This document shows positions 1 to 54,694 of a stretch of 64,000 nucleotides of DNA, one piece after another. Positions within the stretch are counted from its first letter, which is position 1; each line of letters begins with the position of its first letter. The notes under the pieces are model-generated. The model was given only the letters and a program-made list of their open reading frames with translations. It made no database searches and was not told the origin of the DNA. The stretch lies in the IMG/VR virus record IMGVR_UViG_3300049001_000044, positions 62,001 to 126,000 of that record; one strand, 5' to 3'. The translations under genes were made by a program, and so were the position numbers.

Positions 1-73
1 CCGTACCCTGGAGTCGAACCAGGCTCTATACTGATTAACAGTCAGTCGCATACACCACGCTTGCTCGTACGGA
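1..73 (-). tRNA. tRNA-Asn(GTT); 3' end cut by window edge
   Basis: Reverse complement folds as a cloverleaf; anticodon arm ACTGA-CT-GTT-AA-TCAGT; T-loop GGTTCGACTCC. Confidence 0.9.
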
Positions 74-80
74 ATTGATT

Positions 81-897: not shown

Positions 898-1027
898 TGG
901 TCGGGAATGATGGAATCGAACCATGGTTTCTTCTGTCCAACCGAAGAGTCCTAACACAAGTCGGTGTGTTACTAACTTGCTGAAAGTATCTTCGGCCAGG
1001 AGCGTTCTGCCATTGAACTAATTCCCG
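898..1027 (-). ncRNA. tRNA-Pro(TGG)-like RNA with ~55-nt structured insertion in the anticodon loop
   Basis: CGGGAAT/ATTCCCG-A-CCA acceptor, D and T arms intact; insert 941-995 closed by CCGAAGA/TCTTCGG. Confidence 0.75.
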
Positions 1028-3347: not shown

Positions 3348-3860
3348 TTATCTCCAAGGGTTGGACTCTGGCTTGATGTTGCCATCCTTGTCGACGCGAT
3401 AGAACGGGCTGTTGTCATCTACGTGGCCTTGCTTGGCGTCATGGACGTGGTCGCCTGCGGTATCATCCCACATGTCTGCGAGATAATCGTAGAAGCCCTT
3501 AGTGCCCTTGTTGAACTTTCTAATGATGCGGTCGATAGCGTCCATGTCGATCTCATACTTGCGCTGGATACGTTCCAACTTGAAGGATGGATCACTACCG
3601 TCAAGTGCTTGAGCTGCAATCATGGAGAGCTCGGTATCGATCTGATACTCCAGCTGTCTCTTAGCTTCTTGGGCCTTAGCACGCTTGTCTTTGCGCTCTT
3701 CGTCAGACATTTTCTGGCGCTTCTTGACAGGTTCATCGTGCGATGCAGCCCATTCTGCGGCGCCCGGGCTAGACATCGACTTGAACCGCTTATATGAACC
3801 GCTCTTGTTTTTGATTTGCACCGAACTCGGTTTGGCCTCGAACAGCTCTGTAACTTTCAT
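3348..3860 (-). CDS. hypothetical, putative head-packaged protein (MKVTELFE)
   Basis: Late-type TAAATA at 3892-3897 upstream. Confidence 0.65.
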   Translation of the reverse strand: MKVTELFEAKPSSVQIKNKSGSYKRFKSMSSPGAAEWAASHDEPVKKRQKMSDEERKDKRAKAQEAKRQLEYQIDTELSMIAAQALDGSDPSFKLERIQRKYEIDMDAIDRIIRKFNKGTKGFYDYLADMWDDTAGDHVHDAKQGHVDDNSPFYRVDKDGNIKPESNPWR

Positions 3861-20403: not shown

Positions 20404-20685
20404 TCACGTACCAGTTCTTTGAGCTTGTCCATCTCGCCTCCTGCAAATGTTCACTAGTTCCCTCGAAGTAATGCTCGAGGCTCCAAGCTGGAGAGCCAAA
20501 TCTCGCTGCTCCCCGGAGATGTCGTAGTGCGGGTACTTCGTGTTCTTGTGGAAGAAGTGGGGTTTGATTCCCACCTTCTCCGCAAATTCGTGCATCTCTT
20601 CGTATGTGTCGGCCACGAGGTGAGCGTAGGATTTCCTTCCCTTACTCCCCTTTTTCCAAGTGGCCCCATCCACGTACACTCCCAT
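20404..20685 (-). CDS. DUF4031-like protein
   Basis: VYVD..HLVAD..E.H.FA..G..HYD. Confidence 0.75.
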   Translation of the reverse strand: MGVYVDGATWKKGSKGRKSYAHLVADTYEEMHEFAEKVGIKPHFFHKNTKYPHYDISGEQRDLALQLGASSITSRELVNICRRRDGQAQRTGT

Positions 20686-21437
20686 CACTTGCCTTTCGAC
20701 AGGTGCTTGATGACCTCGACTGCGTGTCCGCACGGGGAGAACACGGAGGCAGACCTGATCGTCGGGAACTTCTTGGAGAGCAGCTCACCAAGTTGCCTGA
20801 ACTCCTTCTCCATCATGAGCTGCTCCACGGTCGGTTCCGCTTCCAAGCTGATGTCGAAGCCCAGGCGCTGCTTCAGGGCCTCCATCTCCTCTTCGTTCAG
20901 GGTCCCGATCTTGGCGATAATCTCGCCCACTTTCCTGCCGCCCGGCTTTCGTGGCCCGTGCTTCTTGCGAACCGGGAGTTGGATCGAGGAAGGGTCGTAG
21001 ACGTGCTTGATGACGTCCTTCCAAGTTTGGCCTGGCTTCGGCCCGCGATCCAGGAACTCCATCACGATCCGCCACTCCTGACCATGGGCCATGACCTTCC
21101 CATTTCCAAGAGAGGGGTTCTCCTTGCGGAGGATTGGGGCAACGTGCTTGGTGGCGATGTGGGCTACCTCGTGTGGAATCGTCTCCAAGATGTAGTCGCT
21201 CTCGTTCTCCACCAGGAACACCGGATGGAAACGCAGGACGTTCAACGAGGGCATTGCCATCCCGCAGGTGAGCGTCTTCAAATCGTACCGGATTTCCGGC
21301 ATGCCCAACTTCAATTTCCACTTCTTGTTGCAAGCGTCGAGGGTTTCTTTAACCCTGGCTTCGCACTTGGCCTTGAGTTCGTCCGTGAGCAATACGGCTT
21401 CACGTTCCATGAACTTGATCTGCTTCTTCTTTTTCAC
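20685..21437 (-). CDS. SprT-like metalloprotease
   Basis: TIPHEVAH...HGQEWR. Confidence 0.85.
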   Translation of the reverse strand: MKKKKQIKFMEREAVLLTDELKAKCEARVKETLDACNKKWKLKLGMPEIRYDLKTLTCGMAMPSLNVLRFHPVFLVENESDYILETIPHEVAHIATKHVAPILRKENPSLGNGKVMAHGQEWRIVMEFLDRGPKPGQTWKDVIKHVYDPSSIQLPVRKKHGPRKPGGRKVGEIIAKIGTLNEEEMEALKQRLGFDISLEAEPTVEQLMMEKEFRQLGELLSKKFPTIRSASVFSPCGHAVEVIKHLSKGK

Positions 21438-21469
21438 CTACAACCTCCGTTGCTGCATTCGATAAGGCT

Positions 21470-21498
21470 ATAATATCACAACCTGATAGAAAGTACAC
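21470..21498 (-). promoter_or_regulatory. early-type promoter GTGTAC-N17-TATTAT
   Basis: Same architecture at 41528-41556 and 47297-47326. Confidence 0.7.
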
Positions 21499-21535
21499 AG
21501 GCAAAATTGTAACAAGCCAGACTTCCTGTTACAAG

Positions 21536-22078
21536 TTACTCAAAGGAAACAAGTCCTCCCATACTCGCATTCATTTGCTCTATTAAAGCAACCCGTTCTT
21601 GGCGGAGTTCTTCGAGCTTAGCGGCATTCGCGGTTGGTAGTTTCAACTCCATTTGGAAAAGGGTGCGAAGTTCCATGAGGAGTTGACCCAAGTGATTTAA
21701 GCCGTTGCCACTGCCCACAGGCGAGACACCCCAGAAGCGGTCGCCCCAAGAGTTGCCCTCAATGAGTATGGCATCTTTCGTGTCGATGAGTAGTTGTTTC
21801 AGGTGGGGATTTTGGTCGAACTTGGCGAAGAGGATTTCCGCCATGACCTCAACTTTGATGTCGTCCCAGTCCGGACGAATGAGGATTTGCCTTCCATATC
21901 TCTTAGCTTGGCCTGGAGACAGATGTAGGAATTTACGTCTTACGAGTGGGTGTTCGGATTTTGCAGCTTGGAAGGCAGCTTCACTGTGGGCCCAAGTGAA
22001 TCCATCCCACGTGAAGCTGCAAAGATAAAAGTTCGATAGGAAACGGTAGTCTCCCTGGAACTCAAGTATTTTTGCCAT
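21536..22078 (-). CDS. NADAR (YbiA/RibX-like) family protein
   Basis: FLSNFY, SEAAFQAAK, KFDQN, IEGNSWGDRFWG, GLNHLG. Confidence 0.9.
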   Translation of the reverse strand: MAKILEFQGDYRFLSNFYLCSFTWDGFTWAHSEAAFQAAKSEHPLVRRKFLHLSPGQAKRYGRQILIRPDWDDIKVEVMAEILFAKFDQNPHLKQLLIDTKDAILIEGNSWGDRFWGVSPVGSGNGLNHLGQLLMELRTLFQMELKLPTANAAKLEELRQERVALIEQMNASMGGLVSFE

Positions 22079-22364
22079 CGGTCTTTTTACGACGCTTCTT
22101 CTTAGGAGGCGTCGTCACTATCTTGTTGAACAGTAAACGAGTGTCGTAAATGACGCCTCTATCCATCAGCACGTCCATGTGGCGTTGATCCAACTGGAAG
22201 TGGTTCTGATGCAGAAGAATGCCGTACTTTGACGCGGCAAAGTTGGCTGCCTGAATTGTGTCTACCCTTCCCCATTGATCGGAGAAGTTGTAGTAAAGCA
22301 GAAGCACGTCTATTTCTAGATCTGAGATATTATTATCGAAGGTGTTATTCTTGCTTAGGTCCAC
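22062..22364 (-). CDS. hypothetical protein
   Basis: ORF. Confidence 0.55.
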   Translation of the reverse strand: MDLSKNNTFDNNISDLEIDVLLLYYNFSDQWGRVDTIQAANFAASKYGILLHQNHFQLDQRHMDVLMDRGVIYDTRLLFNKIVTTPPKKKRRKKTDGKNT

Positions 22365-22403
22365 CTTGGGTGCCTCCGTACGGCGTATTGCGACAGCTCT
22401 ATT

Positions 22404-22604
22404 TTACTTCGGCGGGCGAGTAAAAATTACTTCGACCAGAGTCGAAGTGTCCTCACGATAATAAACCGAGAACCCAGCTGCAAGAGCATCGGCCTCGGGC
22501 GTACCAGTCACTGTAGTTGGATCATACGCTACAGTAACGACTACGGCCCCAGCTTCCGCCAGGGCCTGTAGATTCTTTTTCTGCGTTTCGGTAAAGTTAC
22601 GCAT
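22404..22604 (-). CDS. hypothetical protein
   Basis: ORF with RBS. Confidence 0.55.
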   Translation of the reverse strand: MRNFTETQKKNLQALAEAGAVVVTVAYDPTTVTGTPEADALAAGFSVYYREDTSTLVEVIFTRPPK

Positions 22605-22928
22605 TCAATCCTTTTCTCGGGAGACCGCCTCCTCGAAGATATCCCACATGGAGTTCTTCCATCCAGGCAACGTCGTGATATCGGTCCCCTTGTTAATCAT
22701 GCCAATTACAGTGTGTCCTTCGTCCTTCGTGAGGCGGACTTCTCCGACAGTGACTGCGTTAATCAACTCAACTGAATAACCCAGGTCTTCCTCAGCGTAT
22801 CCTTGACCGTATGGATGACGTTCAATACCATGGTGCTCCACCCTGTAGGTGATAAGCACGTCCATCATATCCACGCCTGCATCGCAAAGCAAATCAAAGT
22901 CGCGGTAAACCAAAGTCTTCATCATCAA
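22605..22928 (-). CDS. hypothetical protein
   Basis: ORF. Confidence 0.6.
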   Translation of the reverse strand: MMMKTLVYRDFDLLCDAGVDMMDVLITYRVEHHGIERHPYGQGYAEEDLGYSVELINAVTVGEVRLTKDEGHTVIGMINKGTDITTLPGWKNSMWDIFEEAVSREKD

Positions 22929-22941
22929 TCCCGTTCAGTAT

Positions 22942-23721
22942 TTATTCAATCATCTCAATGGCAAGTCGCTTGCACGAGTTACCGAATTCGCTCGTATCAA
23001 CGATGATCACATCGTACCCTCTGTCCTCCAGGGTCTTCTTCAGCTGAGGCGTGATCTTCGATACGATAATTGTATCATGTATCGAAATCGCGTTACACAC
23101 CATATTCAATGCATCCTCCTCAGTTATCTCGATCATCTTGCCTTCGTACCACATCTCGATGTTCATCTTCGAGTGCGGATGGAAAGCGTTCGGGTACCAA
23201 AGTAGGTCACCAGTATCTAGCGTGTTCATCACCATGCTCAGGTGATAGAAGCGAGGGTCCTTCAACAGGATGGGACGTACGATGATATCCGCTTCATCGA
23301 GCAGGTCGTCAAGGTGGGCTTTGAACTTGTGGGAGCTGCGATGACCGAAGCCAAACCACAGATGCTTGCGATCGTGACTAATGACTACATCACTGCCTTC
23401 GAACGTGTCAGGACGTTCTTCGCCCCCGTACGATGGGTTGTAGAGGATGTCAAAGCGATGTTCTTGGAACCACTCGGCAATGAAGTGCTCATCGACTTGG
23501 CGTCGTGCGTGCTTAAAGCGGCCCACTATGAAGTCGTTTTTGTACACTGTTCCATAGTCGCCGCAATAGACGCTATCTACTCGCTTCGATGGAGTGTCAG
23601 GCATGACGATCACGTCCGCACCGACGTCGAGCAGCATATTGCGCAGATCGCTCCACTGTTGATACTCCTTGAACGTCGTGTCAGGAGCGGATGGGGTTGT
23701 CATGATGAATTGCTTGGTCAT
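22942..23721 (-). CDS. amidinotransferase / dimethylargininase-family protein
   Basis: DSVY..D, FEGSD, PRFYHL, CNA, C-terminal SC motif of pentein fold. Confidence 0.75.
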   Translation of the reverse strand: MTKQFIMTTPSAPDTTFKEYQQWSDLRNMLLDVGADVIVMPDTPSKRVDSVYCGDYGTVYKNDFIVGRFKHARRQVDEHFIAEWFQEHRFDILYNPSYGGEERPDTFEGSDVVISHDRKHLWFGFGHRSSHKFKAHLDDLLDEADIIVRPILLKDPRFYHLSMVMNTLDTGDLLWYPNAFHPHSKMNIEMWYEGKMIEITEEDALNMVCNAISIHDTIIVSKITPQLKKTLEDRGYDVIIVDTSEFGNSCKRLAIEMIE

Positions 23722-24349: not shown

Positions 24350-24778
24350 ATGGCCGCTCATCGCACACCACCAAAGCCAGCATGGTACGACAGCGTTCCT
24401 GAAGGGACCTGTCGTTGGTGCAACAAGGAAGTTGGCTTGACTAGGACTGGCCGTCAAAGCAAGTCACGTTGGCACGCGAAATGTTTTGAGGAATATGAGC
24501 TGCTCTTCTTTGCTGGAGAAACGAGGAAGGCAGTTTGGAAGAGAGATTTTGGCAAGTGCGCAGAGTGCGGACATCAATGCGCTAGGAAGGGTGAAGATGT
24601 GTGGCACATGGACCACATCAAGCCGCTCATCGAAGCCAACGGTGATCTGTCTTATTGGCGTCTTCCTAACTTGCAAACTCTCTGTCAAGAGTGCCACATC
24701 AAGAAGACATCGGCTGAAGCAACTGAACGAGCGACTCGTAGGAGGCTCTTGAAGGAGGCAAAAGAAAAGGGAGCTTAA
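24350..24778 (+). CDS. HNH endonuclease
   Basis: CAEC..DHIKPL..NLQTLCQECH. Confidence 0.9.
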   Translation: MAAHRTPPKPAWYDSVPEGTCRWCNKEVGLTRTGRQSKSRWHAKCFEEYELLFFAGETRKAVWKRDFGKCAECGHQCARKGEDVWHMDHIKPLIEANGDLSYWRLPNLQTLCQECHIKKTSAEATERATRRRLLKEAKEKGA

Positions 24779-24788
24779 GCTCCCTTTT
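24766..24788. terminator. bidirectional terminator
   Basis: AAAAGGGAGCTTAAGCTCCCTTTT. Confidence 0.8.
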
Positions 24789-24790
24789 CT

Positions 24791-24907
24791 GATAATGTTG
24801 GTAGGATTCGAACCTACACTTGCAGTCATTTGATGAACAGTTGGGGTGTTTATTCCCTCTCCCAGTCTTAGTGGGACGCCTTGACCAATTTGGCGTTCAA
24901 CATTATC
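24791..24907 (-). ncRNA. tRNA-Leu(AAG)-like RNA with oversized variable region, no CCA
   Basis: 10-bp closing stem GATAATGTTG/CAACATTATC; D arm; TCCCA-CTAAGAC-TGGGA; GTAGG-TTCGAAT-CCTAC. Confidence 0.65.
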
Positions 24908-24941
24908 GCGAGGCTGCTAGTTATGCAGCATCGTTATCGAA

Positions 24942-25496
24942 TTAAGCTGCTTCCAGCTCTGCTTCAACCATCGTTTCGGTACCTTCGACTTGTGCTTCGA
25001 CTGCGATGCCGCTGCCTTCAGCTTCGGCTTCCGGCGCCGGATCTGCGAAGACTGCAGCGACCTTGCGGGTGGTAGTGGAAGCCTTGACGGTGGTCTTGGC
25101 CTCGGTTGCTTCAGCCTTGCGACCGCGAGGCAGCTTGGTCACGACGCCGCCGACTTCCTTGATGCGACCACCCAGGATCTGGTTCAGTTCCAGCAGGTGC
25201 TTTTTCAGCTGCTTGACGGTGATTTCCGGTTCGACGGTCTTCGCCGCTTCCAGCAGACGCTCTTCAGCTTTCGAGAAGAACTCCGGGTTGACGAAGTTGT
25301 AGTTGCGCGGGATTTCGAAACCTTGCGCGCCCAGGGTGGTGCCGACTTCGATTGCTACGCCCTTCCAGCTGTCGGCGTGATCGGCCGGGCGTGCTTCTTT
25401 CCAGAAGCCGGTTGCGATTTCCTGCAGCAGGACTTGTTGCAGAACAGCCTGTTGAGCGGCGGTCGCAACGAACAGAACTTTGGTGGTGGTCGACAT
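24942..25496 (-). CDS. hypothetical protein with Lys/Ala/Thr- and Glu-rich tail
   Basis: AGGAG RBS, promoter 25561-25594. Confidence 0.75.
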   Translation of the reverse strand: MSTTTKVLFVATAAQQAVLQQVLLQEIATGFWKEARPADHADSWKGVAIEVGTTLGAQGFEIPRNYNFVNPEFFSKAEERLLEAAKTVEPEITVKQLKKHLLELNQILGGRIKEVGGVVTKLPRGRKAEATEAKTTVKASTTTRKVAAVFADPAPEAEAEGSGIAVEAQVEGTETMVEAELEAA

Positions 25497-25595
25497 CTTC
25501 AAATCTCCTAAAAGAAAATACATCAAAATTTAATACGATCGTTTGTTTGATCGATGAGTTATTTTACTTTGCAACGTCATCATCAAAAACTGCAT

Positions 25596-25904: not shown

Positions 25905-26114
25905 TTAGAAGTCAACTTGTCTGACTTCCTTTACAGCTGCAGAAAATTCAACCTGCACTAGCATGCCCGCACGCAGATTATGGGTGTTCAAAGTCAGGTA
26001 AGTGTAGCTCATCCCAAACTCGTTCTCCATGTACACCTCATCATACTGGTCTGCCATGTGAGGTGCTGGCCAAGGTCTTACGGACTTGACCGTCATCTTC
26101 ACCCTGAAGCTCAA
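25905..26114 (-). CDS. hypothetical protein
   Basis: ORF coupled to telA. Confidence 0.5.
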   Translation of the reverse strand: MSFRVKMTVKSVRPWPAPHMADQYDEVYMENEFGMSYTYLTLNTHNLRAGMLVQVEFSAAVKEVRQVDF

Positions 26115-27238
26115 TTGGTGCCCCAGTTCTTCATCTCGAGACGGAGCTGCTCGCGGTTTGCAGAGATTTTCTGCGCATCAGCTTGGCGTTGGGCACGGCC
26201 TTGGGCTTCGATCTGCTTGACTTGGCCCAGGCGGTCGATGAGCTTGGCTTGGGTATACTCGAGCGTATCAGTATCTGCGACCGAGGAACGTTGCGCCAGT
26301 TGGGCGGTTTGAATCGAGCTCTCATGCATGAGGTCAGCACGCTTACGCATCAGATCGTTGTTGCGATCGGCGATGGCATTACCCAGCTTCGCACGATTGA
26401 GGTTCCTTGCTGCCTGCAGAGCCATGGTCAGCTGGCGTTTCCACAGAGGGAGGGTCACGTCGATGATGTCATTGAAGGAAGCAGTGGTGTCGAAGTTGTT
26501 CTTCTGCAGCGAGCGAATGTCTGGTGCATCCATCATGCCGATCTGAATCAGGCGCTCGAGGCGGTCGATCTGTCGCTCGATGCGCTCTTGGATGTTGGCC
26601 TCGTCATTGATGAGCTGGGCATGTTGCATTCGCTGCGTGTCGTCCATGTCCGTCTCCGGCACTTGACGGAGAGAGTTCACGTATGCGATTTGTCGCTGCA
26701 GCAGTTCTTGAAGATTCTCCACGTCATCCTTCATCGTGATGATCTCTTTGATGTTCTCCTGGTAGAGTTGCTCCAACCATTTGTTCTCCACCTGCATCTC
26801 GACCAGCTCTTTCTTCAGATCGTTCGCGATGCGTTCGACTTGCTGGTTGACGTCTTCGTACTGAGCGAGGACCTTCACTCGGGTTTGCTTGAAGAGGTTG
26901 GTGATCTTACCCACCAGACCAGGGTCGCCCTCTTCCAGCTTCGACATGTCCACGGTGGCAGTGAGCGAGAGGATGTCAGTGATGCCCTTACCCAAACCGC
27001 CAGTGTCACCCACCTTCACCTTGTTCAGTACTTGCTCGCTGATCTTATTGATCTTGCTCGTGCTGCCGCGGCCGATCTCTTCAATGTTGGCTGGGAGTTG
27101 GGGCTTCTGCACCAGGCCGTACGTGGGCTGAACTACCGGCAGATTCGCGGTAGGCTGGCTAATCGTCGCATTCAAGTTGATGGACGGGGTCTTTGCGATC
27201 GTCGGCTTTGCGCCAAACATTTTGCTGAAGTCGGTCAT
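26111..27238 (-). CDS. TelA/KlaB toxic-anion resistance family protein
   Basis: Coiled-coil protein with AP.IR..Q.NN and TLPLWK motifs. Confidence 0.8.
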   Translation of the reverse strand: MTDFSKMFGAKPTIAKTPSINLNATISQPTANLPVVQPTYGLVQKPQLPANIEEIGRGSTSKINKISEQVLNKVKVGDTGGLGKGITDILSLTATVDMSKLEEGDPGLVGKITNLFKQTRVKVLAQYEDVNQQVERIANDLKKELVEMQVENKWLEQLYQENIKEIITMKDDVENLQELLQRQIAYVNSLRQVPETDMDDTQRMQHAQLINDEANIQERIERQIDRLERLIQIGMMDAPDIRSLQKNNFDTTASFNDIIDVTLPLWKRQLTMALQAARNLNRAKLGNAIADRNNDLMRKRADLMHESSIQTAQLAQRSSVADTDTLEYTQAKLIDRLGQVKQIEAQGRAQRQADAQKISANREQLRLEMKNWGTN

Positions 27239-27993
27239 AGTGCGTTCCTTAATTCGATAGATTGCTTGGTGCCGTTCAAAACATCCAAGCACAACATTCG
27301 GTACATGGGAACAGTGGCGTTGAGTAGGTCGTCAACTTGATGCGGACGAGTCTTGATATCCATCGCCAGCTTTCTCACCTGTTCCACTCCTAGTGCCACA
27401 AGCTGCTGTTGGGTGTAGAGGGTGTGGCACCGCCTGTTAATTGCGTCCACCTCCAGATCGTCAGTGCAGTTGGGTTTTTTCTTCTCCAGATCTGCACCGG
27501 CTTTCGCCAACTGTTCAGCAAGGTATGAGGCCTGCTGCAGCATCTTCTCCACTTCCGCAATCTTGAAAGGATTGGGACGTTTGAAGCTGCGCAAGGTTGC
27601 TTCCACTTCAGCAATCACCGTGTCGACATAGGCGTCCATGTCGACTTGCGGCTCTTGTTTGAAGAAGCGGAAGATGGATTTTGAAGATGCTTGTTCGTTG
27701 TGGCGCAAGACATCTTCCGCCATCTCATGCAATTTCTGCTGAACCTCTGCAACGATGTCCACATCGTTCTTCACCAGTGCCTCGATCAAGTCCACGTGCT
27801 CCTTGACCTTCTCACTCAGGTCACGGCGCCAGTCCATGATATTGTTGCTGTTGCTGAAAGCATTCGAAGGAGAAGTGCGAACTACAGCAGGTGCTTGTGC
27901 TTTCGGCTTCTCAAACATCTTGCTGTAATCCACTTTCTTCTCCTTCGCTTTCGCAGCAGGTTGGTTTTCAAACATCCTGCTGTAATCTTTCAT
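27235..27993 (-). CDS. helical protein, TelA-like paralog/partner
   Basis: DYSKMF N-terminal motif shared with telA; TVPMY C-terminus resembles TLPLW. Confidence 0.6.
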   Translation of the reverse strand: MKDYSRMFENQPAAKAKEKKVDYSKMFEKPKAQAPAVVRTSPSNAFSNSNNIMDWRRDLSEKVKEHVDLIEALVKNDVDIVAEVQQKLHEMAEDVLRHNEQASSKSIFRFFKQEPQVDMDAYVDTVIAEVEATLRSFKRPNPFKIAEVEKMLQQASYLAEQLAKAGADLEKKKPNCTDDLEVDAINRRCHTLYTQQQLVALGVEQVRKLAMDIKTRPHQVDDLLNATVPMYRMLCLDVLNGTKQSIELRNAL

Positions 27994-28205
27994 CGCTGCC
28001 TAAAACACTGGTAGATGAAGGTGACCATCTTCTCTTCGACCCCCTCATCGCTTAACGAATCGATGAAGGCATCCGAGATGTGGCAGAATCTGCCCTTCGG
28101 CATCTTGAAGTCGGAAGGATGCTGGGAGCCGTGAGCCATGATGGTCTCCACGTTTCGTTCCCTTGCATCCTTCACCAACTTCTTGAAGAGCTCTTTGGCT
28201 TCCAT
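27990..28205 (-). CDS. hypothetical protein
   Basis: Coupled ORF. Confidence 0.55.
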   Translation of the reverse strand: MEAKELFKKLVKDARERNVETIMAHGSQHPSDFKMPKGRFCHISDAFIDSLSDEGVEEKMVTFIYQCFRQR

Positions 28206-28885
28206 TACTCGGTTTCGAAACCGTACAGGTGGAAGAATTCAGCCAGACCGTTCTCGAATCCTTGATTAACGGCTTTGACGGACCAAACACCGTTCTTTTT
28301 ACGGAGCTCAACGAAGAGCAGGCTGGTTGCCGAGTTACCGTCAGCGGTAGTGGCGTCGTCTTCCAGGTCGTAGCTGGCAAGACACTCATCCGTTTCGTTG
28401 TTGAACACCTTGATCCAAGAGTTGTGGACTTGGCCGAAGTTCTGGCGGCGAGCATGCGCTTCGTCGATGGTCACGATGACGTGGACGACGTTGATTTCTT
28501 CCGGCAGGCGATCAGTGAAGACCGTGATGATCTCGTCGGCACCATCACCAGCACCGTCACGGCTGTCGCCGCTGTGGATCATTGCGCAGTTCGGAACAGT
28601 CGGCTTGCCTTTCTTCGGCAGACCACTATCGATGAAGGTGGTCTTGTCGTCGCTAGTGCGCAGCATCGAGTTGTAGAAGAGAACGAATTCTTCGCTGTGA
28701 CCACGGCCGAACGGATACTCGGGTTCATCTTTGTCGACAAGACCGATCGCGCTGACGTCGAGGTCGAACTTCTGACCGGTCTGGAAGACTTGCGGGCTCC
28801 AACCTAGTTCCAGCCGAACTGCGGTGATTGCCGAACCATCGGCTTTCTGCATTTTCAGCTTGCTACCTTTGGTCATTTGCAACAT
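28205..28885 (-). CDS. terD: TerD-family stress protein
   Basis: LGW..FDLD.SA..FYN..HSGD.RDG.GDG.DE.I. Confidence 0.9.
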   Translation of the reverse strand: MLQMTKGSKLKMQKADGSAITAVRLELGWSPQVFQTGQKFDLDVSAIGLVDKDEPEYPFGRGHSEEFVLFYNSMLRTSDDKTTFIDSGLPKKGKPTVPNCAMIHSGDSRDGAGDGADEIITVFTDRLPEEINVVHVIVTIDEAHARRQNFGQVHNSWIKVFNNETDECLASYDLEDDATTADGNSATSLLFVELRKKNGVWSVKAVNQGFENGLAEFFHLYGFETE

Positions 28886-28975
28886 GGTATTTCCTTTCAA
28901 GATTTACGAAGGGGAGTAATTTCCCCTTCGTTTGAAACATGAGATATTCTACTATCGATTGATGCTCTGAAAAAC

Positions 28976-52871: not shown

Positions 52872-53356
52872 TACTCTTCTCCTAAGATCATTTTGATTGC
52901 CTTGAGCGTGGTGCCAGTAGCGGTGGAGAGCTCATCCCGCAGCATCTGAATTGCGTCAGGATTTTTCTCCCACTCGCTGCCGAATGCGTCCTTTAGCACT
53001 GCGATGATATGGTTTTTCTCTAGCACTGTGGCATTGATGACGGGTTCAGGCAGGGCGGCTTTGACTTCCGCGTTCTTCACCTTCTTCGCATCCAGTTTTT
53101 CCAGGTGCTCTTCGTATCCTTCAAGAGCTTCCACCTCTTCGTCAGAGATGGGTTCCCAATCTCTGATCTTTCCGCAGTCCATACAGATGTAGACGTGAGT
53201 CTCATCTCCACCCAGAATTCCAACATAGGGGAGGTAACCCTGAGTCTCAAAATTTTTGAGGTGAGAGAACCGCACATTGGTTACGTCGTTGTGCTTGACG
53301 TAAATCTCCATCAGTCGCGTGCATTCACACATCATCGGCCTTTCAAAATACTGCAA
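52871..53356 (-). CDS. hypothetical protein
   Basis: GYLP..GGD....CMDCG. Confidence 0.6.
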   Translation of the reverse strand: MQYFERPMMCECTRLMEIYVKHNDVTNVRFSHLKNFETQGYLPYVGILGGDETHVYICMDCGKIRDWEPISDEEVEALEGYEEHLEKLDAKKVKNAEVKAALPEPVINATVLEKNHIIAVLKDAFGSEWEKNPDAIQMLRDELSTATGTTLKAIKMILGEE

Positions 53357-54449
53357 TCAATCGTTTGATACGAGCCTTACGCTCTTTGTTCATGGCCACG
53401 CCGATGGCCGGGCCTTCCAGGTGCGTGTAGGGTTCGCTCGTTACTCGACGAACCTCTTGCAGCATTTCCTTCAATTCGTCAGGCCATACCGCAGTCACGT
53501 GGCCGGAATTGTTCAGCACTTCGACAGCTAAGATCACGTCCTTGATGAGCGTGTCATCTTGCCATGCTTTCGTCGTCTTGAACAGTTCGAAGATGGCTTC
53601 GACTTCCAGATCACCCATCCTGTCGATGCGCTGAACAGCTTGATGGATTTGGGTGACGTGGGTGGGCAGAGCATGCACACGACCAGGCAGATCATTCTTC
53701 GCAGTCAACGCGACGAAGTAAGCGAACTGAATCTCGTCCCTGACATAGCGAAGAGTCCTTGCCAGCTTGTCCATCTTGGAGATGACTCGCACGGCTTCAT
53801 GCTGATTGCCCCACACCTCTTTGAAGAACTTGACCCTATTGAAGACGCCAAAGCTGTGCAAGACGTGGAACATCAAGTTAGCCCTGCCGTCTTCAACTGC
53901 TTTGCTGATCTCCAGCCAGTAGCGTTCGTAGGGGATGTGGTCAAGTTCACCCGACTCAACCACGCTGATCGCCAGCTTTTGGGTCTCCTCTGCAATGGAG
54001 AAGTCCTCATAGCGCGCAGCAAATCGTGCGAGGCGAACAACACGCAGAGGGTCTTCAGCAAAAGCTGGGGACACATGCCTCAGCACCTTGTTCTTCAGAT
54101 CATCCAAACCACCGAAGTAGTCGATGATGTTGCCATGAACGCTATCCTTTGCGAGGGCGTTGATGGTGAGGTCACGGCGAGAGAGGTCTTCTTCCAACGT
54201 CACGTCGGTACCGAAGTCGCAGGAGAAACCGTGATAGCCAACACCCGTCTTTCGTTCACGGCGCGCCATTGCAATCTGACTACCATCTGCAGGGTCGATG
54301 AAGACGGGGAAGTCAGCACCGACCGGATCACCGAAGCTTGCTTGCAGTTGTTCGAACGTGCAGCCAACAGCTACGTAATCCAAATCATTTGTTGGTCGGC
54401 CCAACAGCTCATCACGAACTGCACCTCCAACCAAATAGACTTTCTTCAT
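53343..54449 (-). CDS. cca: tRNA nucleotidyltransferase (CCA-adding enzyme, class II)
   Basis: YLVGGAVRD.LLG..DLD; DLSRRDLTINA; EDPLRV.R.ARF. Confidence 0.92.
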   Translation of the reverse strand: MKKVYLVGGAVRDELLGRPTNDLDYVAVGCTFEQLQASFGDPVGADFPVFIDPADGSQIAMARRERKTGVGYHGFSCDFGTDVTLEEDLSRRDLTINALAKDSVHGNIIDYFGGLDDLKNKVLRHVSPAFAEDPLRVVRLARFAARYEDFSIAEETQKLAISVVESGELDHIPYERYWLEISKAVEDGRANLMFHVLHSFGVFNRVKFFKEVWGNQHEAVRVISKMDKLARTLRYVRDEIQFAYFVALTAKNDLPGRVHALPTHVTQIHQAVQRIDRMGDLEVEAIFELFKTTKAWQDDTLIKDVILAVEVLNNSGHVTAVWPDELKEMLQEVRRVTSEPYTHLEGPAIGVAMNKERKARIKRLIAVF

Positions 54450-54694
54450 CAATCCTCCTCGATGGTTGTTCCAAAGAAATGGCAAACGCTGCCCTTTACC
54501 TTCTTGCCCTTTGGGTTAACTGCTTTGAATGACGTGCCAAGAGCCCAAAATTGTGGAGGTCCACAACGAATGTCCATAGCACCGTCATTCACTTCAACGT
54601 GGGTGTAGCCATTCTTCTCAAGGAGGTCTTGATCAGCTTGACTTTGACACCCAACGAGAAGCAAGGCCACCGTTACGATGGCCAGGTATTTCAC
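54449..54694 (-). CDS. putative lipoprotein
   Basis: LLVGC lipobox. Confidence 0.7.
   Translation of the reverse strand: MKYLAIVTVALLLVGCQSQADQDLLEKNGYTHVEVNDGAMDIRCGPPQFWALGTSFKAVNPKGKKVKGSVCHFFGTTIEED

What the first reader, a model, noticed from the sequence alone, without database searches (positions are those of the whole stretch)
24791..24907. Isolated tRNA-Leu(AAG)-like RNA with extended acceptor, ~42-nt variable region and no CCA
Seen: perfect 10-bp closing stem, Leu-like D loop, 5-bp/7-nt anticodon arm reading AAG (A34 is rare in bacteria outside Arg), oversized variable region and canonical T arm, then a terminator. It lies far from the tRNA cluster, in the 3' region of gene 24942. 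Inference: a tRNA mimic or decoy, or an mRNA 3'-end processing element.
Basis: partly seen in the sequence, partly recalled or inferred. Interest (0 to 1): 0.6.

Follow-up and report, generated by a model that had tools for sequence, protein, structure and literature searches.

The report
Orphan tRNA-like RNA in jumbo phage
A 343-kb soil phage carries, far from its 50-odd normal tRNA genes, a lone leucine-tRNA look-alike with an oversized extra domain and no CCA tail. Its fold is conserved in a sister phage but its anticodon loop is not, so it is probably a tRNA mimic and not a working tRNA.

Summary
On the minus strand, window 24904-24793 matches the Rfam tRNA model at 46 bits (cut-off 29). 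It has an anticodon arm reading AAG, a 42-nt variable region of two small hairpins and a canonical T arm. Three extra pairs make a 10-bp closing stem (24907-24791). There is no CCA, and a terminator follows.

The window is part of a complete 343-kb phage genome with about 52 tRNA genes in two clusters. About 50 of them encode CCA. The element lies 24 kb from the nearest cluster, 37 nt behind a conserved gene of unknown function, with no promoter match between.

It occurs only in very close kin. One sister contig (L016) has it. Relatives at 75% protein identity or less have only a terminator or a small ORF there.

Against L016, 88 nt in four blocks are identical, while neighbouring third codon positions are 81% identical. 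Every difference lies in a loop or bulge or is compensated. The anticodon loop is 7 nt here and 5 nt in L016, and the discriminator base differs.

Best reading: a tRNA-Leu-derived, non-decoding tRNA mimic cut out of a 3' UTR. Its function and expression are untested. Moderately interesting.

The parts
24791..24907 (-). Whole tRNA-like element including the 10-bp closing stem. The 7-bp acceptor is extended by three pairs, -3..-1 with 73..75.
   Evidence: Sequence. MFE fold. Own covariance model R1 scores 142 bits here and 134 bits on L016.
24793..24904 (-). Match to the Rfam tRNA model over all model positions (1-71).
   Evidence: 46.0 bits, gathering score 29.
24877..24895 (-). D arm: 4-bp stem CGCC/GGCG (or 3 bp plus an A.A mismatch as aligned by cmscan) with an 11-nt loop containing GG. 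It is preceded by A8 and A9. Either there is one extra connector base or position 26 is missing.
   Evidence: cmscan alignment. Fold. Identical in L016.
24860..24876 (-). Anticodon-like arm: stem UCCCA/UGGGA, loop CUAAGAC, anticodon AAG at 24869-24867. In L016 the loop is CUAAA (5 nt).
24818..24859 (-). 42-nt variable region. Hairpin V1 (24857-24844) has 3 bp and an 8-nt loop. Hairpin V2 (24841-24818) has 9 bp with an internal loop.
   Evidence: Folds of both copies give the same two hairpins. In V2 a U-A pair here is C-G in L016.
24801..24817 (-). T arm GUAGG / UUCGAAU / CCUAC.
   Evidence: Identical in L016.
24913..24929 (-). Small hairpin (5-bp stem, 7-nt loop) between the stop codon of the upstream gene and the element. 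It is 100% conserved in L016 and absent from relatives that lack the element.
   Evidence: Sequence. Alignment. L014 and L015.
24760..24788 (.). Bidirectional intrinsic-terminator-like hairpin: GGGAGC / UUAA / GCUCCC, flanked by an A-tract and a U-tract. It is shared with the convergent HNH gene and conserved in L014, L015, L016 and L019.
   Evidence: Sequence. The simple consensus scanner did not list it.
24942..25526 (-). Upstream gene ('gene X', 184-194 aa depending on the start). It is conserved in more than 120 metagenomic jumbo-phage proteins, with no Pfam, PHROG or PDB match. The element lies in its 3' untranslated region.
24350..24778 (+). Convergent HNH endonuclease gene. Its stop codon lies in the terminator loop. 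It is present at this locus also in relatives that lack the element.
   Evidence: Pfam HNH and phrog_11604. L015 and L019.
53343..54485 (-). Phage-encoded CCA-adding tRNA nucleotidyltransferase. It could add CCA to a CCA-less tRNA-like RNA (inference).
   Evidence: PF01743 at 79 bits. NCBIfam CCA addition/repair protein, E = 5e-89 over the head domain, below the equivalog cut-off.

Best explanation
The element is a gene for a tRNA-like RNA derived from a class II (leucine-type) tRNA. It was acquired recently by one narrow lineage of uncultivated, roughly 340-kb soil jumbo phages.

Most likely sequence of events, all inferred from position and anatomy:
1. It is transcribed as the tail of the upstream gene's mRNA and ends at the terminator directly behind it.
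2. Because it keeps the acceptor/T-arm stack and the D/T-loop elbow, host tRNA-processing enzymes can recognise it (RNase P at the 5' side, 3' trimming).
3. It may then receive CCA from the phage's own CCA-adding enzyme.
4. Cutting would leave the conserved upstream hairpin as the new 3' end of the mRNA and release a stable RNA of about 110 nt.

What selection preserves is the L-shaped body, the extended closing stem and the two-hairpin variable domain. It does not preserve the anticodon loop or the discriminator base. The conserved role is therefore that of a tRNA mimic (a ligand, decoy or processing/stability module) and not decoding of CUU.

Shown: the fold, its conservation pattern, its distribution and its genomic context. 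Inferred: transcription, processing, CCA addition and the cellular partner.
For: Real tRNA-like fold:
- 46 bits against RF00005.

Not like the phage's working tRNAs:
- About 50 of 52 ARAGORN tRNA genes encode CCA. The element does not, here or in L016.
- It has A8, an irregular acceptor-D connector and a 42-nt two-hairpin variable region.
- tRNA-Leu(GAG), which reads CUU and CUC, is already encoded.

Selection on the body but not on the anticodon (window against L016):
- Four blocks totalling 88 nt are identical.
- Third codon positions of the adjacent gene are 80.6% identical, and the intergenic DNA upstream of gene X is 64% identical. This gives P of about 6e-9 at the neutral rate.
- All differences lie in loops or bulges or are compensated. 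The closing stem loses one pair on both strands. One V2 pair changes from U-A to C-G.
- The anticodon loop is 7 nt here and 5 nt in L016. Base 73 changes from A to U and stays paired with base -1.
- L016's copy does not reach the Rfam tRNA threshold.

The 5-nt-loop version is probably not a one-off error:
- Contigs of a second run (X2) cover 24745-24927 with 11 gap letters. L016 shows the same number of gap letters against the window.

Co-transcription:
- There is no sigma-70-like site between gene and element, and a terminator follows directly.

The phage encodes a CCA-adding enzyme.
Against: - Only two full sequences are available, about 90% identical overall, so the covariation rests on two compensated events.
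- A recent transfer of the module between the two phages would also give long identical blocks without selection.
- This phage's own copy has a fully canonical anticodon arm (U33, A37), A73 and a possible A15-U48 pair. It could still be charged and decode.
- With a 4-bp stem, L016's loop can be read as 7 nt with anticodon UAA (also Leu), although it would then have C33.
- No RNA data exist for this phage, so expression, ends and CCA are unknown.
- Pairing of bases -1 to -3 with 73-75 is expected to hinder canonical RNase P cleavage (general knowledge).
- The element is absent from all more distant relatives, so it is dispensable for this phage group.
Confidence: 0.5

Rival explanations
1. It is a working tRNA-Leu(AAG). 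After RNase P and 3' processing and CCA addition it is charged by the host LeuRS. It then reads CUU, or CUU, CUC and CUA if A34 is deaminated to inosine. The long variable region would simply be tolerated.
For: - The 5-bp/7-nt anticodon arm is canonical, with U33 and A37. A73, G18G19 and the T loop are present.
- CUU is about 23% of Leu codons in long ORFs (noisy ORF set).
- The phage encodes a CCA-adding enzyme.
- E. coli-type LeuRS does not need the anticodon (general knowledge).
Against: - The sister copy has a 5-nt loop and U73 while everything else is kept.
- There is no encoded CCA, unlike about 50 of 52 tRNAs here.
- A8 replaces the near-universal U8, and the connector is irregular.
- The 42-46-nt two-hairpin variable region is beyond any decoding tRNA I know of.
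- It is redundant with the phage's tRNA-Leu(GAG).
- The discriminator is paired in both copies.
- No phage LeuRS-type synthetase was found.
Confidence: 0.15
2. It is a functionless relic. A tRNA-Leu gene copy, with an insertion in its variable region, was dragged to this spot by recombination near the HNH homing-endonuclease gene and is now decaying.
For: - The distribution is very narrow. The element is absent from relatives with 70-79% (gene X) or 84% (HNH) protein identity and from 17 IMG/VR loci, which have a small ORF or nothing in the same slot.
- An HNH gene lies next to it.
- The anticodon loop is damaged in L016.
- There is no CCA.
Against: - There are no uncompensated changes in any helix except the outermost pair of the stem extension.
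- 88 nt are identical where about 17 differences are expected at the neighbouring synonymous rate.
- Two compensated stem events were found.
- The HNH gene sits at this locus in relatives without the element, so the two did not arrive together.
Confidence: 0.2
3. It is a Y-RNA-like partner of the phage's Ro60 (TROVE) protein, or another trans-acting decoy for host tRNA-targeting defences.
For: - The phage encodes a TROVE/Ro60 homologue.
- Bacterial and phage Y RNAs contain tRNA-like modules. One of them is cut by RNase P and receives CCA (PMC4201824).
- Jumbo phages with TROVE proteins are expected to have tRNA-like partners (PMC7824862).
- No canonical YrlA was found in the 3.5-kb stretch around the phage's rsr gene that was scanned.
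Against: - The element lies about 39 kb from rsr, whereas reported YrlA genes lie within 4 kb.
- It has no GGUCCGA-like Ro60 motif in a terminal helix. Its closing stem is A/U-rich.
- No Rfam Y RNA or YrlA family reached E <= 1.
- Another RNA in the window (898-1027) is a much better Ro60-partner candidate.
- Decoy activity cannot be tested here.
Confidence: 0.1

Closest known systems
Class II elongator tRNA-Leu (Rfam RF00005), including phage-encoded tRNA-Leu genes
   Same: - Full cloverleaf with a 7-bp acceptor core.
- Leu-type D arm with a GG-containing long loop.
- 5-bp/7-nt anticodon arm, T arm with UUCGAAU, and A73.
- 46 bits against the tRNA model.
   Different: - The variable region is 42 nt with two hairpins, where the phage's own Leu, Ser and Tyr tRNAs have a single short arm.
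- A8, an irregular connector, no encoded CCA, and a discriminator paired in a 10-bp stem.
- The anticodon loop is not conserved in the sister copy.
- It lies alone in a 3' UTR.
Bacterial and phage Y RNAs of the YrlA type (tRNA-mimicking partners of Ro60/Rsr; PMC4201824)
   Same: - A non-decoding RNA of about 100 nt with tRNA-like D and T arms.
- It occurs in a genome that encodes Ro60 and a CCA-adding enzyme.
- M. smegmatis YrlA is cut by RNase P and gets CCA.
- D. radiodurans Yrn1 has an 'anticodon arm' with a non-7-nt loop.
   Different: - No Ro60-binding motif.
- Not near rsr.
- The 5' and 3' ends are at the acceptor stem, not at the anticodon-stem position.
- No Rfam Y RNA or YrlA family reached E <= 1.
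tRNA-like 3'-end modules cut by RNase P (mammalian MALAT1 mascRNA; dicistronic tRNA-mRNA transcripts) - from general knowledge
   Same: A tRNA-like fold sits directly behind a coding or long transcript, preceded by a small stable structure that would become the new 3' end.
   Different: - Those are eukaryotic.
- Here a normal intrinsic terminator already follows.
- Cleavage is not shown.
Non-translating pseudo-tRNAs such as Bacillus cereus tRNA-Other (PMC3399842, abstract seen)
   Same: A predicted tRNA-like gene outside the normal set that does not serve translation.
   Different: No sequence relation. That one is chromosomal and flanks a genomic island. The comparison is by analogy only.
Unannotated tRNA-like element of Ralstonia jumbo phage RsoM2USA (MG752970.1 75346-75426; L012 2451-2531)
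   Same: - The T arm and the first five bases of the 3' acceptor strand are identical, 25 of 26 nt over the aligned stretch.
- The 5' acceptor bases UGUUGAA are the same.
- The closing stem is extended (9 bp) and there is no CCA.
   Different: - 81 nt, no D arm and a different interior.
- It lies inside a tRNA cluster.
- The phages are otherwise unrelated at this locus.
- Homology is uncertain (28.5 bits to R1).

Membership tests
Canonical tRNA (RF00005), class II tRNA-Leu | Cloverleaf scoring above the family threshold | tested here: met
   46.0 bits against a threshold of 29. The sister copy L016 does not reach the threshold.
Canonical tRNA (RF00005), class II tRNA-Leu | Conserved core bases: G18G19, T loop UUCRANY, G53-C61, and U8 with a 2-nt acceptor-D connector | tested here: inconclusive
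   The T loop, G53-C61 and GG are present. Position 8 is A, and the connector has an extra base or position 26 is missing.
Canonical tRNA (RF00005), class II tRNA-Leu | Variable arm is a single hairpin within the known size range (up to roughly 20-25 nt, from general knowledge) | tested here: not met
   42 nt here and 46 nt in L016, forming two hairpins. The phage's own Leu, Ser and Tyr tRNAs have single short arms.
Canonical tRNA (RF00005), class II tRNA-Leu | 7-nt anticodon loop and anticodon conserved among orthologues | tested here: not met
   CUAAGAC here and CUAAA in L016.
Canonical tRNA (RF00005), class II tRNA-Leu | 3' CCA encoded, as in this genome's tRNA set, with a free discriminator base | tested here: not met
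   About 50 of 52 tRNA genes encode CCA. The element has A-UCAG, and base 73 is paired with base -1 in both copies.
Canonical tRNA (RF00005), class II tRNA-Leu | Aminoacylation and decoding | not testable with these tools
   No RNA run holds this phage.
Y RNA / YrlA (Ro60 partner) | GGUCCGA-like Ro60-binding strand in a terminal helix | tested here: not met
   The closing stem is GAUAAUGUUG/CAACAUUAUC. The motif definition is from PMC4201824.
Y RNA / YrlA (Ro60 partner) | Encoded within about 4 kb of rsr on the same strand | tested here: not met
   rsr lies at genome 46.0-47.6 kb and the element at 86.8 kb. The strand is the same, but they are about 39 kb apart.
Y RNA / YrlA (Ro60 partner) | Match to Rfam Y RNA or YrlA models | tested here: not met
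   Only the tRNA family matched at E <= 1 in 24600-25100.
tmRNA (a permuted tmRNA lies 0.5-2.6 kb downstream of the gene X homologue in many relatives) | G3:U70 Ala-type acceptor, CCA, tag reading frame, match to tmRNA models | tested here: not met
   Pair 3:70 is U-A and there is no CCA. There are no tmRNA hits in the window or genome.
RNase P-processed 3'-end tRNA-like module | tRNA-like fold in a 3' UTR with no promoter of its own | tested here: met
   It starts 37 nt after the stop codon, there is no sigma-70-like site between, and a terminator follows. Phage-specific promoters are not covered by the scan.
RNase P-processed 3'-end tRNA-like module | Cleavage at the 5' side of the tRNA-like fold | not testable with these tools
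   This needs RNA ends or an in vitro assay.
tRNA pseudogene (neutral relic) | Substitutions spread without regard to structure | tested here: not met
   All differences lie in loops or bulges or are compensated. 88 identical nt compare with 80.6% identity at neighbouring third codon positions. This rests on two sequences only.

The most novel reading that the evidence does not exclude
The element is the founding member of an undescribed class of phage tRNA mimics. They would be CCA-less, have a closed and extended acceptor stem, and carry a two-hairpin domain in place of the variable arm. After processing and CCA addition by the phage's own enzyme, such an RNA would act in trans. It might be a partner of the phage Ro60/RNA-repair machinery, or a decoy that soaks up host tRNA-targeting defence nucleases or sensors. 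The RsoM2USA element with the same T arm and extended stem would be a distant relative.
Probability: 0.15. Interest if true: 0.7.

Novelty: new variant of a known kind. Interest (0 to 1): 0.45.

Why it matters
Jumbo phages carry large tRNA sets, and those genes are usually counted by automatic callers and read as codon-usage or anti-defence adaptations. This case shows a tRNA-shaped gene that the standard caller misses. Comparative evidence places it outside decoding: its body is conserved and its anticodon is free to change.

If it is expressed and processed, it would add a phage example to the small list of tRNA mimics (Y RNAs, mascRNA, pseudo-tRNAs). The same genome also encodes Ro60, a CCA-adding enzyme and other odd tRNA-like RNAs. 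That makes it a compact system for asking what tRNA mimicry does during infection.

If it is only a short-lived passenger, it still documents how tRNA-derived modules move into a variable slot beside a homing-endonuclease gene.

Tried and rejected
Searches for more copies:
- Exact and gapped DNA patterns from the conserved blocks found nothing in IMG/VR or in GTDB genomes.
- The JGI metagenome scan gave one hit (L017). Its acceptor and interior are unrelated, so I dropped it.
- blastn against isolate phages returned only T-arm-sized matches.
- The 2-kb neighbourhood and gene X have no match in isolate phages.

Origin of the variable-region insert:
- It has no second copy in the genome.
- It does not resemble the roughly 55-nt inserts of the phage's interrupted tRNA genes. 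A shared mobile insert is rejected.

Structure counting on the MAFFT or model-fitted alignments:
- I abandoned this because hairpin V2 is misaligned by two columns.
- I compared the independent folds of the two copies instead.

Other readings considered and rejected:
- tmRNA relic: rejected.
- Relaxed ARAGORN proposed other parses, such as Met with an intron. They are inconsistent and were discarded.
- Hairpin V2 as the true anticodon arm: rejected, because its loop is 3 nt here and 5 nt in L016.

Gene X:
- No Pfam, PHROG, PDB-sequence or Atlas lead.

Not used:
- Complex prediction and structure prediction, because no claim in this report rests on a protein-protein contact or a protein fold.

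Full report
WHAT IS THERE

Read on the minus strand, window 24907-24791 is a complete tRNA cloverleaf with additions. The Rfam tRNA model aligns end to end to 24904-24793 at 46.0 bits. The gathering score is 29. E is 1.3e-6 in the window and 1.6e-9 in the genome search.

The alignment gives these parts:
- Acceptor AAUGUUG/CAACAUU.
- A class-II-type D arm with a GG-containing loop.
- Anticodon stem UCCCA/UGGGA with loop CUAAGAC, which has U33, anticodon AAG and A37.
- A 42-nt variable region.
- T arm GUAGG/UUCGAAU/CCUAC.
- A at position 73.

The next bases are UCAG, not CCA. A strong hairpin with a U-tract follows at 24788-24760. RNAfold alone recovers the same six helices (-32.6 kcal/mol, z = -2.8). 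ARAGORN misses the element.

CONTEXT

The window is bases 62001-126000 of a 343,229-bp virus record with direct terminal repeats, rated complete.
- ARAGORN finds 52 tRNA genes and the Rfam model 55 matches. All are on the minus strand, in two clusters at 52-63 kb and 195-214 kb.
- The element, at genome 86.8 kb, is 23.8 kb from the nearest cluster.
- It starts 37 nt after the stop codon of a 184-194-aa ORF (24942-25526). This ORF has no Pfam, PHROG, PDB or Atlas lead, but it has more than 120 metagenomic homologues.
- No sigma-70-like site lies between the gene and the element.
- The terminator is shared with a convergent HNH endonuclease gene, 24350-24778.
- The closest isolate phages for a neighbouring TelA-like gene are Rak2/CBB-type jumbo phages at about 30% identity. 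This is an uncultivated lineage. The DNA comes from a soil metagenome.

HOW IT DIFFERS FROM THE PHAGE'S WORKING tRNAs

- About 50 of the 52 called tRNA genes encode their CCA end. So do the four interrupted tRNA-like genes mentioned below. The element does not.
- Position 8 is A. The acceptor-D connector has an extra base, or position 26 is missing.
- The phage's own Leu, Ser and Tyr tRNAs have single short variable arms. The element has two hairpins in 42 nt.
- tRNA-Leu(GAG), which reads CUU and CUC, is already present.
- The phage has no LeuRS-type synthetase.

DISTRIBUTION

The slot between gene X and the terminator is variable.
- Five IMG/VR relatives (47-59% identity) have a terminator or a small ORF there and no tRNA.
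- A contig with 75% identity (L014) has the terminator 25 nt after the stop codon.
- Contigs L015 (gene X 70% identical) and L019 (HNH 84% identical) have the same HNH gene and terminator, but a hairpin plus a small ORF in place of the element.
- I built a covariance model from the two known copies (R1). It finds nothing comparable in 17 further IMG/VR loci, or in the complete 358-kb and 368-kb genomes of relatives.
- Rfam finds no tRNA at that position either.
- Pattern scans of IMG/VR, JGI metagenomes and GTDB genomes found no further copy.

The element does occur in L016. This is a 1404-nt Logan contig whose gene X protein falls in the same 90% cluster as the window's.

Laying contigs of run X2 on the window shows a relative covering 24745-24927 with 10 substitutions and 11 gap letters. 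A more diverged contig covers 24840-25212. L016 differs from the window by the same number of gap letters. X2 therefore probably holds the L016-type version. This is an inference, because the X2 letters were not shown.

WHAT SELECTION KEEPS

Between the window and L016:
- Gene X is 91% identical, with 80.6% identity at third codon positions.
- The intergenic DNA upstream of gene X is 64% identical.
- Inside the element, four blocks totalling 88 nt are identical. They cover the acceptor core, the D arm, the anticodon stem, the stem of V1, the T arm and the 3' acceptor strand. At the neighbouring synonymous rate the chance of this is about 6e-9. Even if only one lineage were constrained, it is about 1e-4.

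The differences are these:
1. One A is lost in the 5' strand of the closing stem, and the 3' strand is rearranged to match. The stem goes from 10 to 8 pairs and stays continuous. Base 73 changes from A to U and still pairs with base -1.
2. The outermost G-C pair is lost.
3. The anticodon loop changes from CUAAGAC to CUAAA.
4. Two bases change in the V1 loop.
5. A bulged C and an internal-loop C are inserted in V2.
6. The V2 loop changes from CAA to ACUAA.
7. The V2 closing pair changes from U-A to C-G.

Independent folds of the two copies give the same architecture. No helix is damaged except the dispensable outer pair. Two stem events are compensated. The three hairpin loops outside the D and T loops are free to vary, and one of them is the anticodon loop.

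INTERPRETATION

The conserved object is the L-shaped body plus the closed stem and the variable-region domain. It is not an anticodon or a leucine discriminator. I therefore read it as a tRNA-Leu-derived mimic and not a decoder (confidence about 0.5).

The most economical mechanism is the following.
1. It is co-transcribed with gene X.
2. The host tRNA-processing machinery recognises it.
3. A stable tRNA-like RNA is released.
4. The conserved hairpin at 24929-24913 is left as the mRNA's new 3' end.

CCA could be supplied by the phage's own CCA-adding enzyme, 53343-54485. None of these steps is shown, because no RNA run holds this phage.

RIVALS

- A true tRNA-Leu(AAG) cannot be excluded for this copy. 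Its loop is canonical.
- A neutral relic is disfavoured by the substitution pattern. It is favoured by the narrow distribution and by the small sample.
- A Ro60 partner or a defence decoy is possible. The phage encodes a TROVE/Ro60 homologue, and Y RNAs of bacteria and phages mimic tRNAs (PMC4201824; PMC7824862). However, the element has no Ro60-binding motif and lies about 39 kb from rsr.

NOVELTY

tRNA mimics and pseudo-tRNAs are known. This anatomy is not one I could find described in the papers searched. It combines an intact cloverleaf, a two-hairpin variable domain, a closed extended acceptor and no CCA, in the 3' UTR of a phage gene.

The only outside resemblance is an unannotated 81-nt CCA-less element in Ralstonia phage RsoM2USA. 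It has the same T arm and acceptor and a 9-bp closing stem. Homology with it is uncertain. I class the finding as a new variant of a known kind, of moderate interest.

Noticed in passing
window 898-1027 (-) = genome 62898-63027: A 130-nt tRNA-like gene with acceptor, D arm, T arm and encoded CCA (RF00005, 36 bits). A 69-nt bulged helix stands in place of the anticodon arm. The 5' strand of that helix (CUGGCCGAAGA) resembles the GGUCCGA Ro60-binding strand of Y RNAs. It is a candidate Y RNA in a tRNA frame, permuted relative to YrlA. No Rfam Y RNA or YrlA family reached E <= 1.
   Followed up: partly
genome G000:C1 about 46.0-47.6 kb (-), locus L040 (outside the window): A 540-aa ORF with a TROVE (Ro60/Rsr) domain (55 bits). 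No Rfam family, YrlA included, matched credibly in the 3.5-kb stretch around it that was scanned.
   Followed up: partly
genome 58599-58728 (L006), 211618-211744 (L007), about 211793-211905; relative G003 357151-357277 (L047) and 309621-309743 (L048): Several tRNA genes, all with encoded CCA, are interrupted in the anticodon region by a conserved insert of about 55 nt. The shared motif is roughly AAACAUCG ... UUUGUUG-loop-GCAACCG ... AUGGUUAUC. It is found in two different jumbo phages. It is far too short for a group I intron, and no RtcB gene is present. Its nature is unexplained.
   Followed up: partly
window 53343-54485 (-): A phage-encoded CCA-adding tRNA nucleotidyltransferase. It has the head domain only and no HD domain.
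   Followed up: yes
L023-L039 (e.g. L033 3462-3848, L039 3705-4041); L001, L004, L005: At least 8 of the 17 related IMG/VR loci carry a permuted (two-piece) tmRNA gene 0.5-2.6 kb downstream of the gene X homologue. This phage has no tmRNA anywhere.
   Followed up: partly
genome 195112-195264 (-): Two adjacent tRNA genes have anticodon CUA (amber suppressors). TAG still ends 46 of 276 long ORFs, and a crude check shows no sign of TAG recoding.
   Followed up: partly
MG752970.1 75346-75426 (L012 2451-2531): Ralstonia phage RsoM2USA has an unannotated 81-nt tRNA-like element with a 9-bp closing stem, no D arm and no CCA. Its T arm and acceptor are nearly identical to the element studied here. It lies in a tRNA cluster with further unannotated tRNA-like pieces.
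   Followed up: partly
L015 3535-3690; L019 about 1790-1990: In relatives without the element, the same slot holds a long hairpin and a small ORF of about 28 codons. The slot beside the HNH gene therefore exchanges cargo.
   Followed up: no
window 20685-23721 and 26111-28900: Neighbouring genes are SprT-like, NADAR, a DDAH/arginine-deiminase-fold protein, TelA-like and TerD-like (a tellurite-resistance-type module). All are conserved with gene X in relatives.
   Followed up: no
L017 about 3690-3810 (JGI contig Ga0210016_1024105): An unrelated odd tRNA-like sequence with the same D-loop and T-arm words and a long interior. It turned up in the pattern scan.
   Followed up: no
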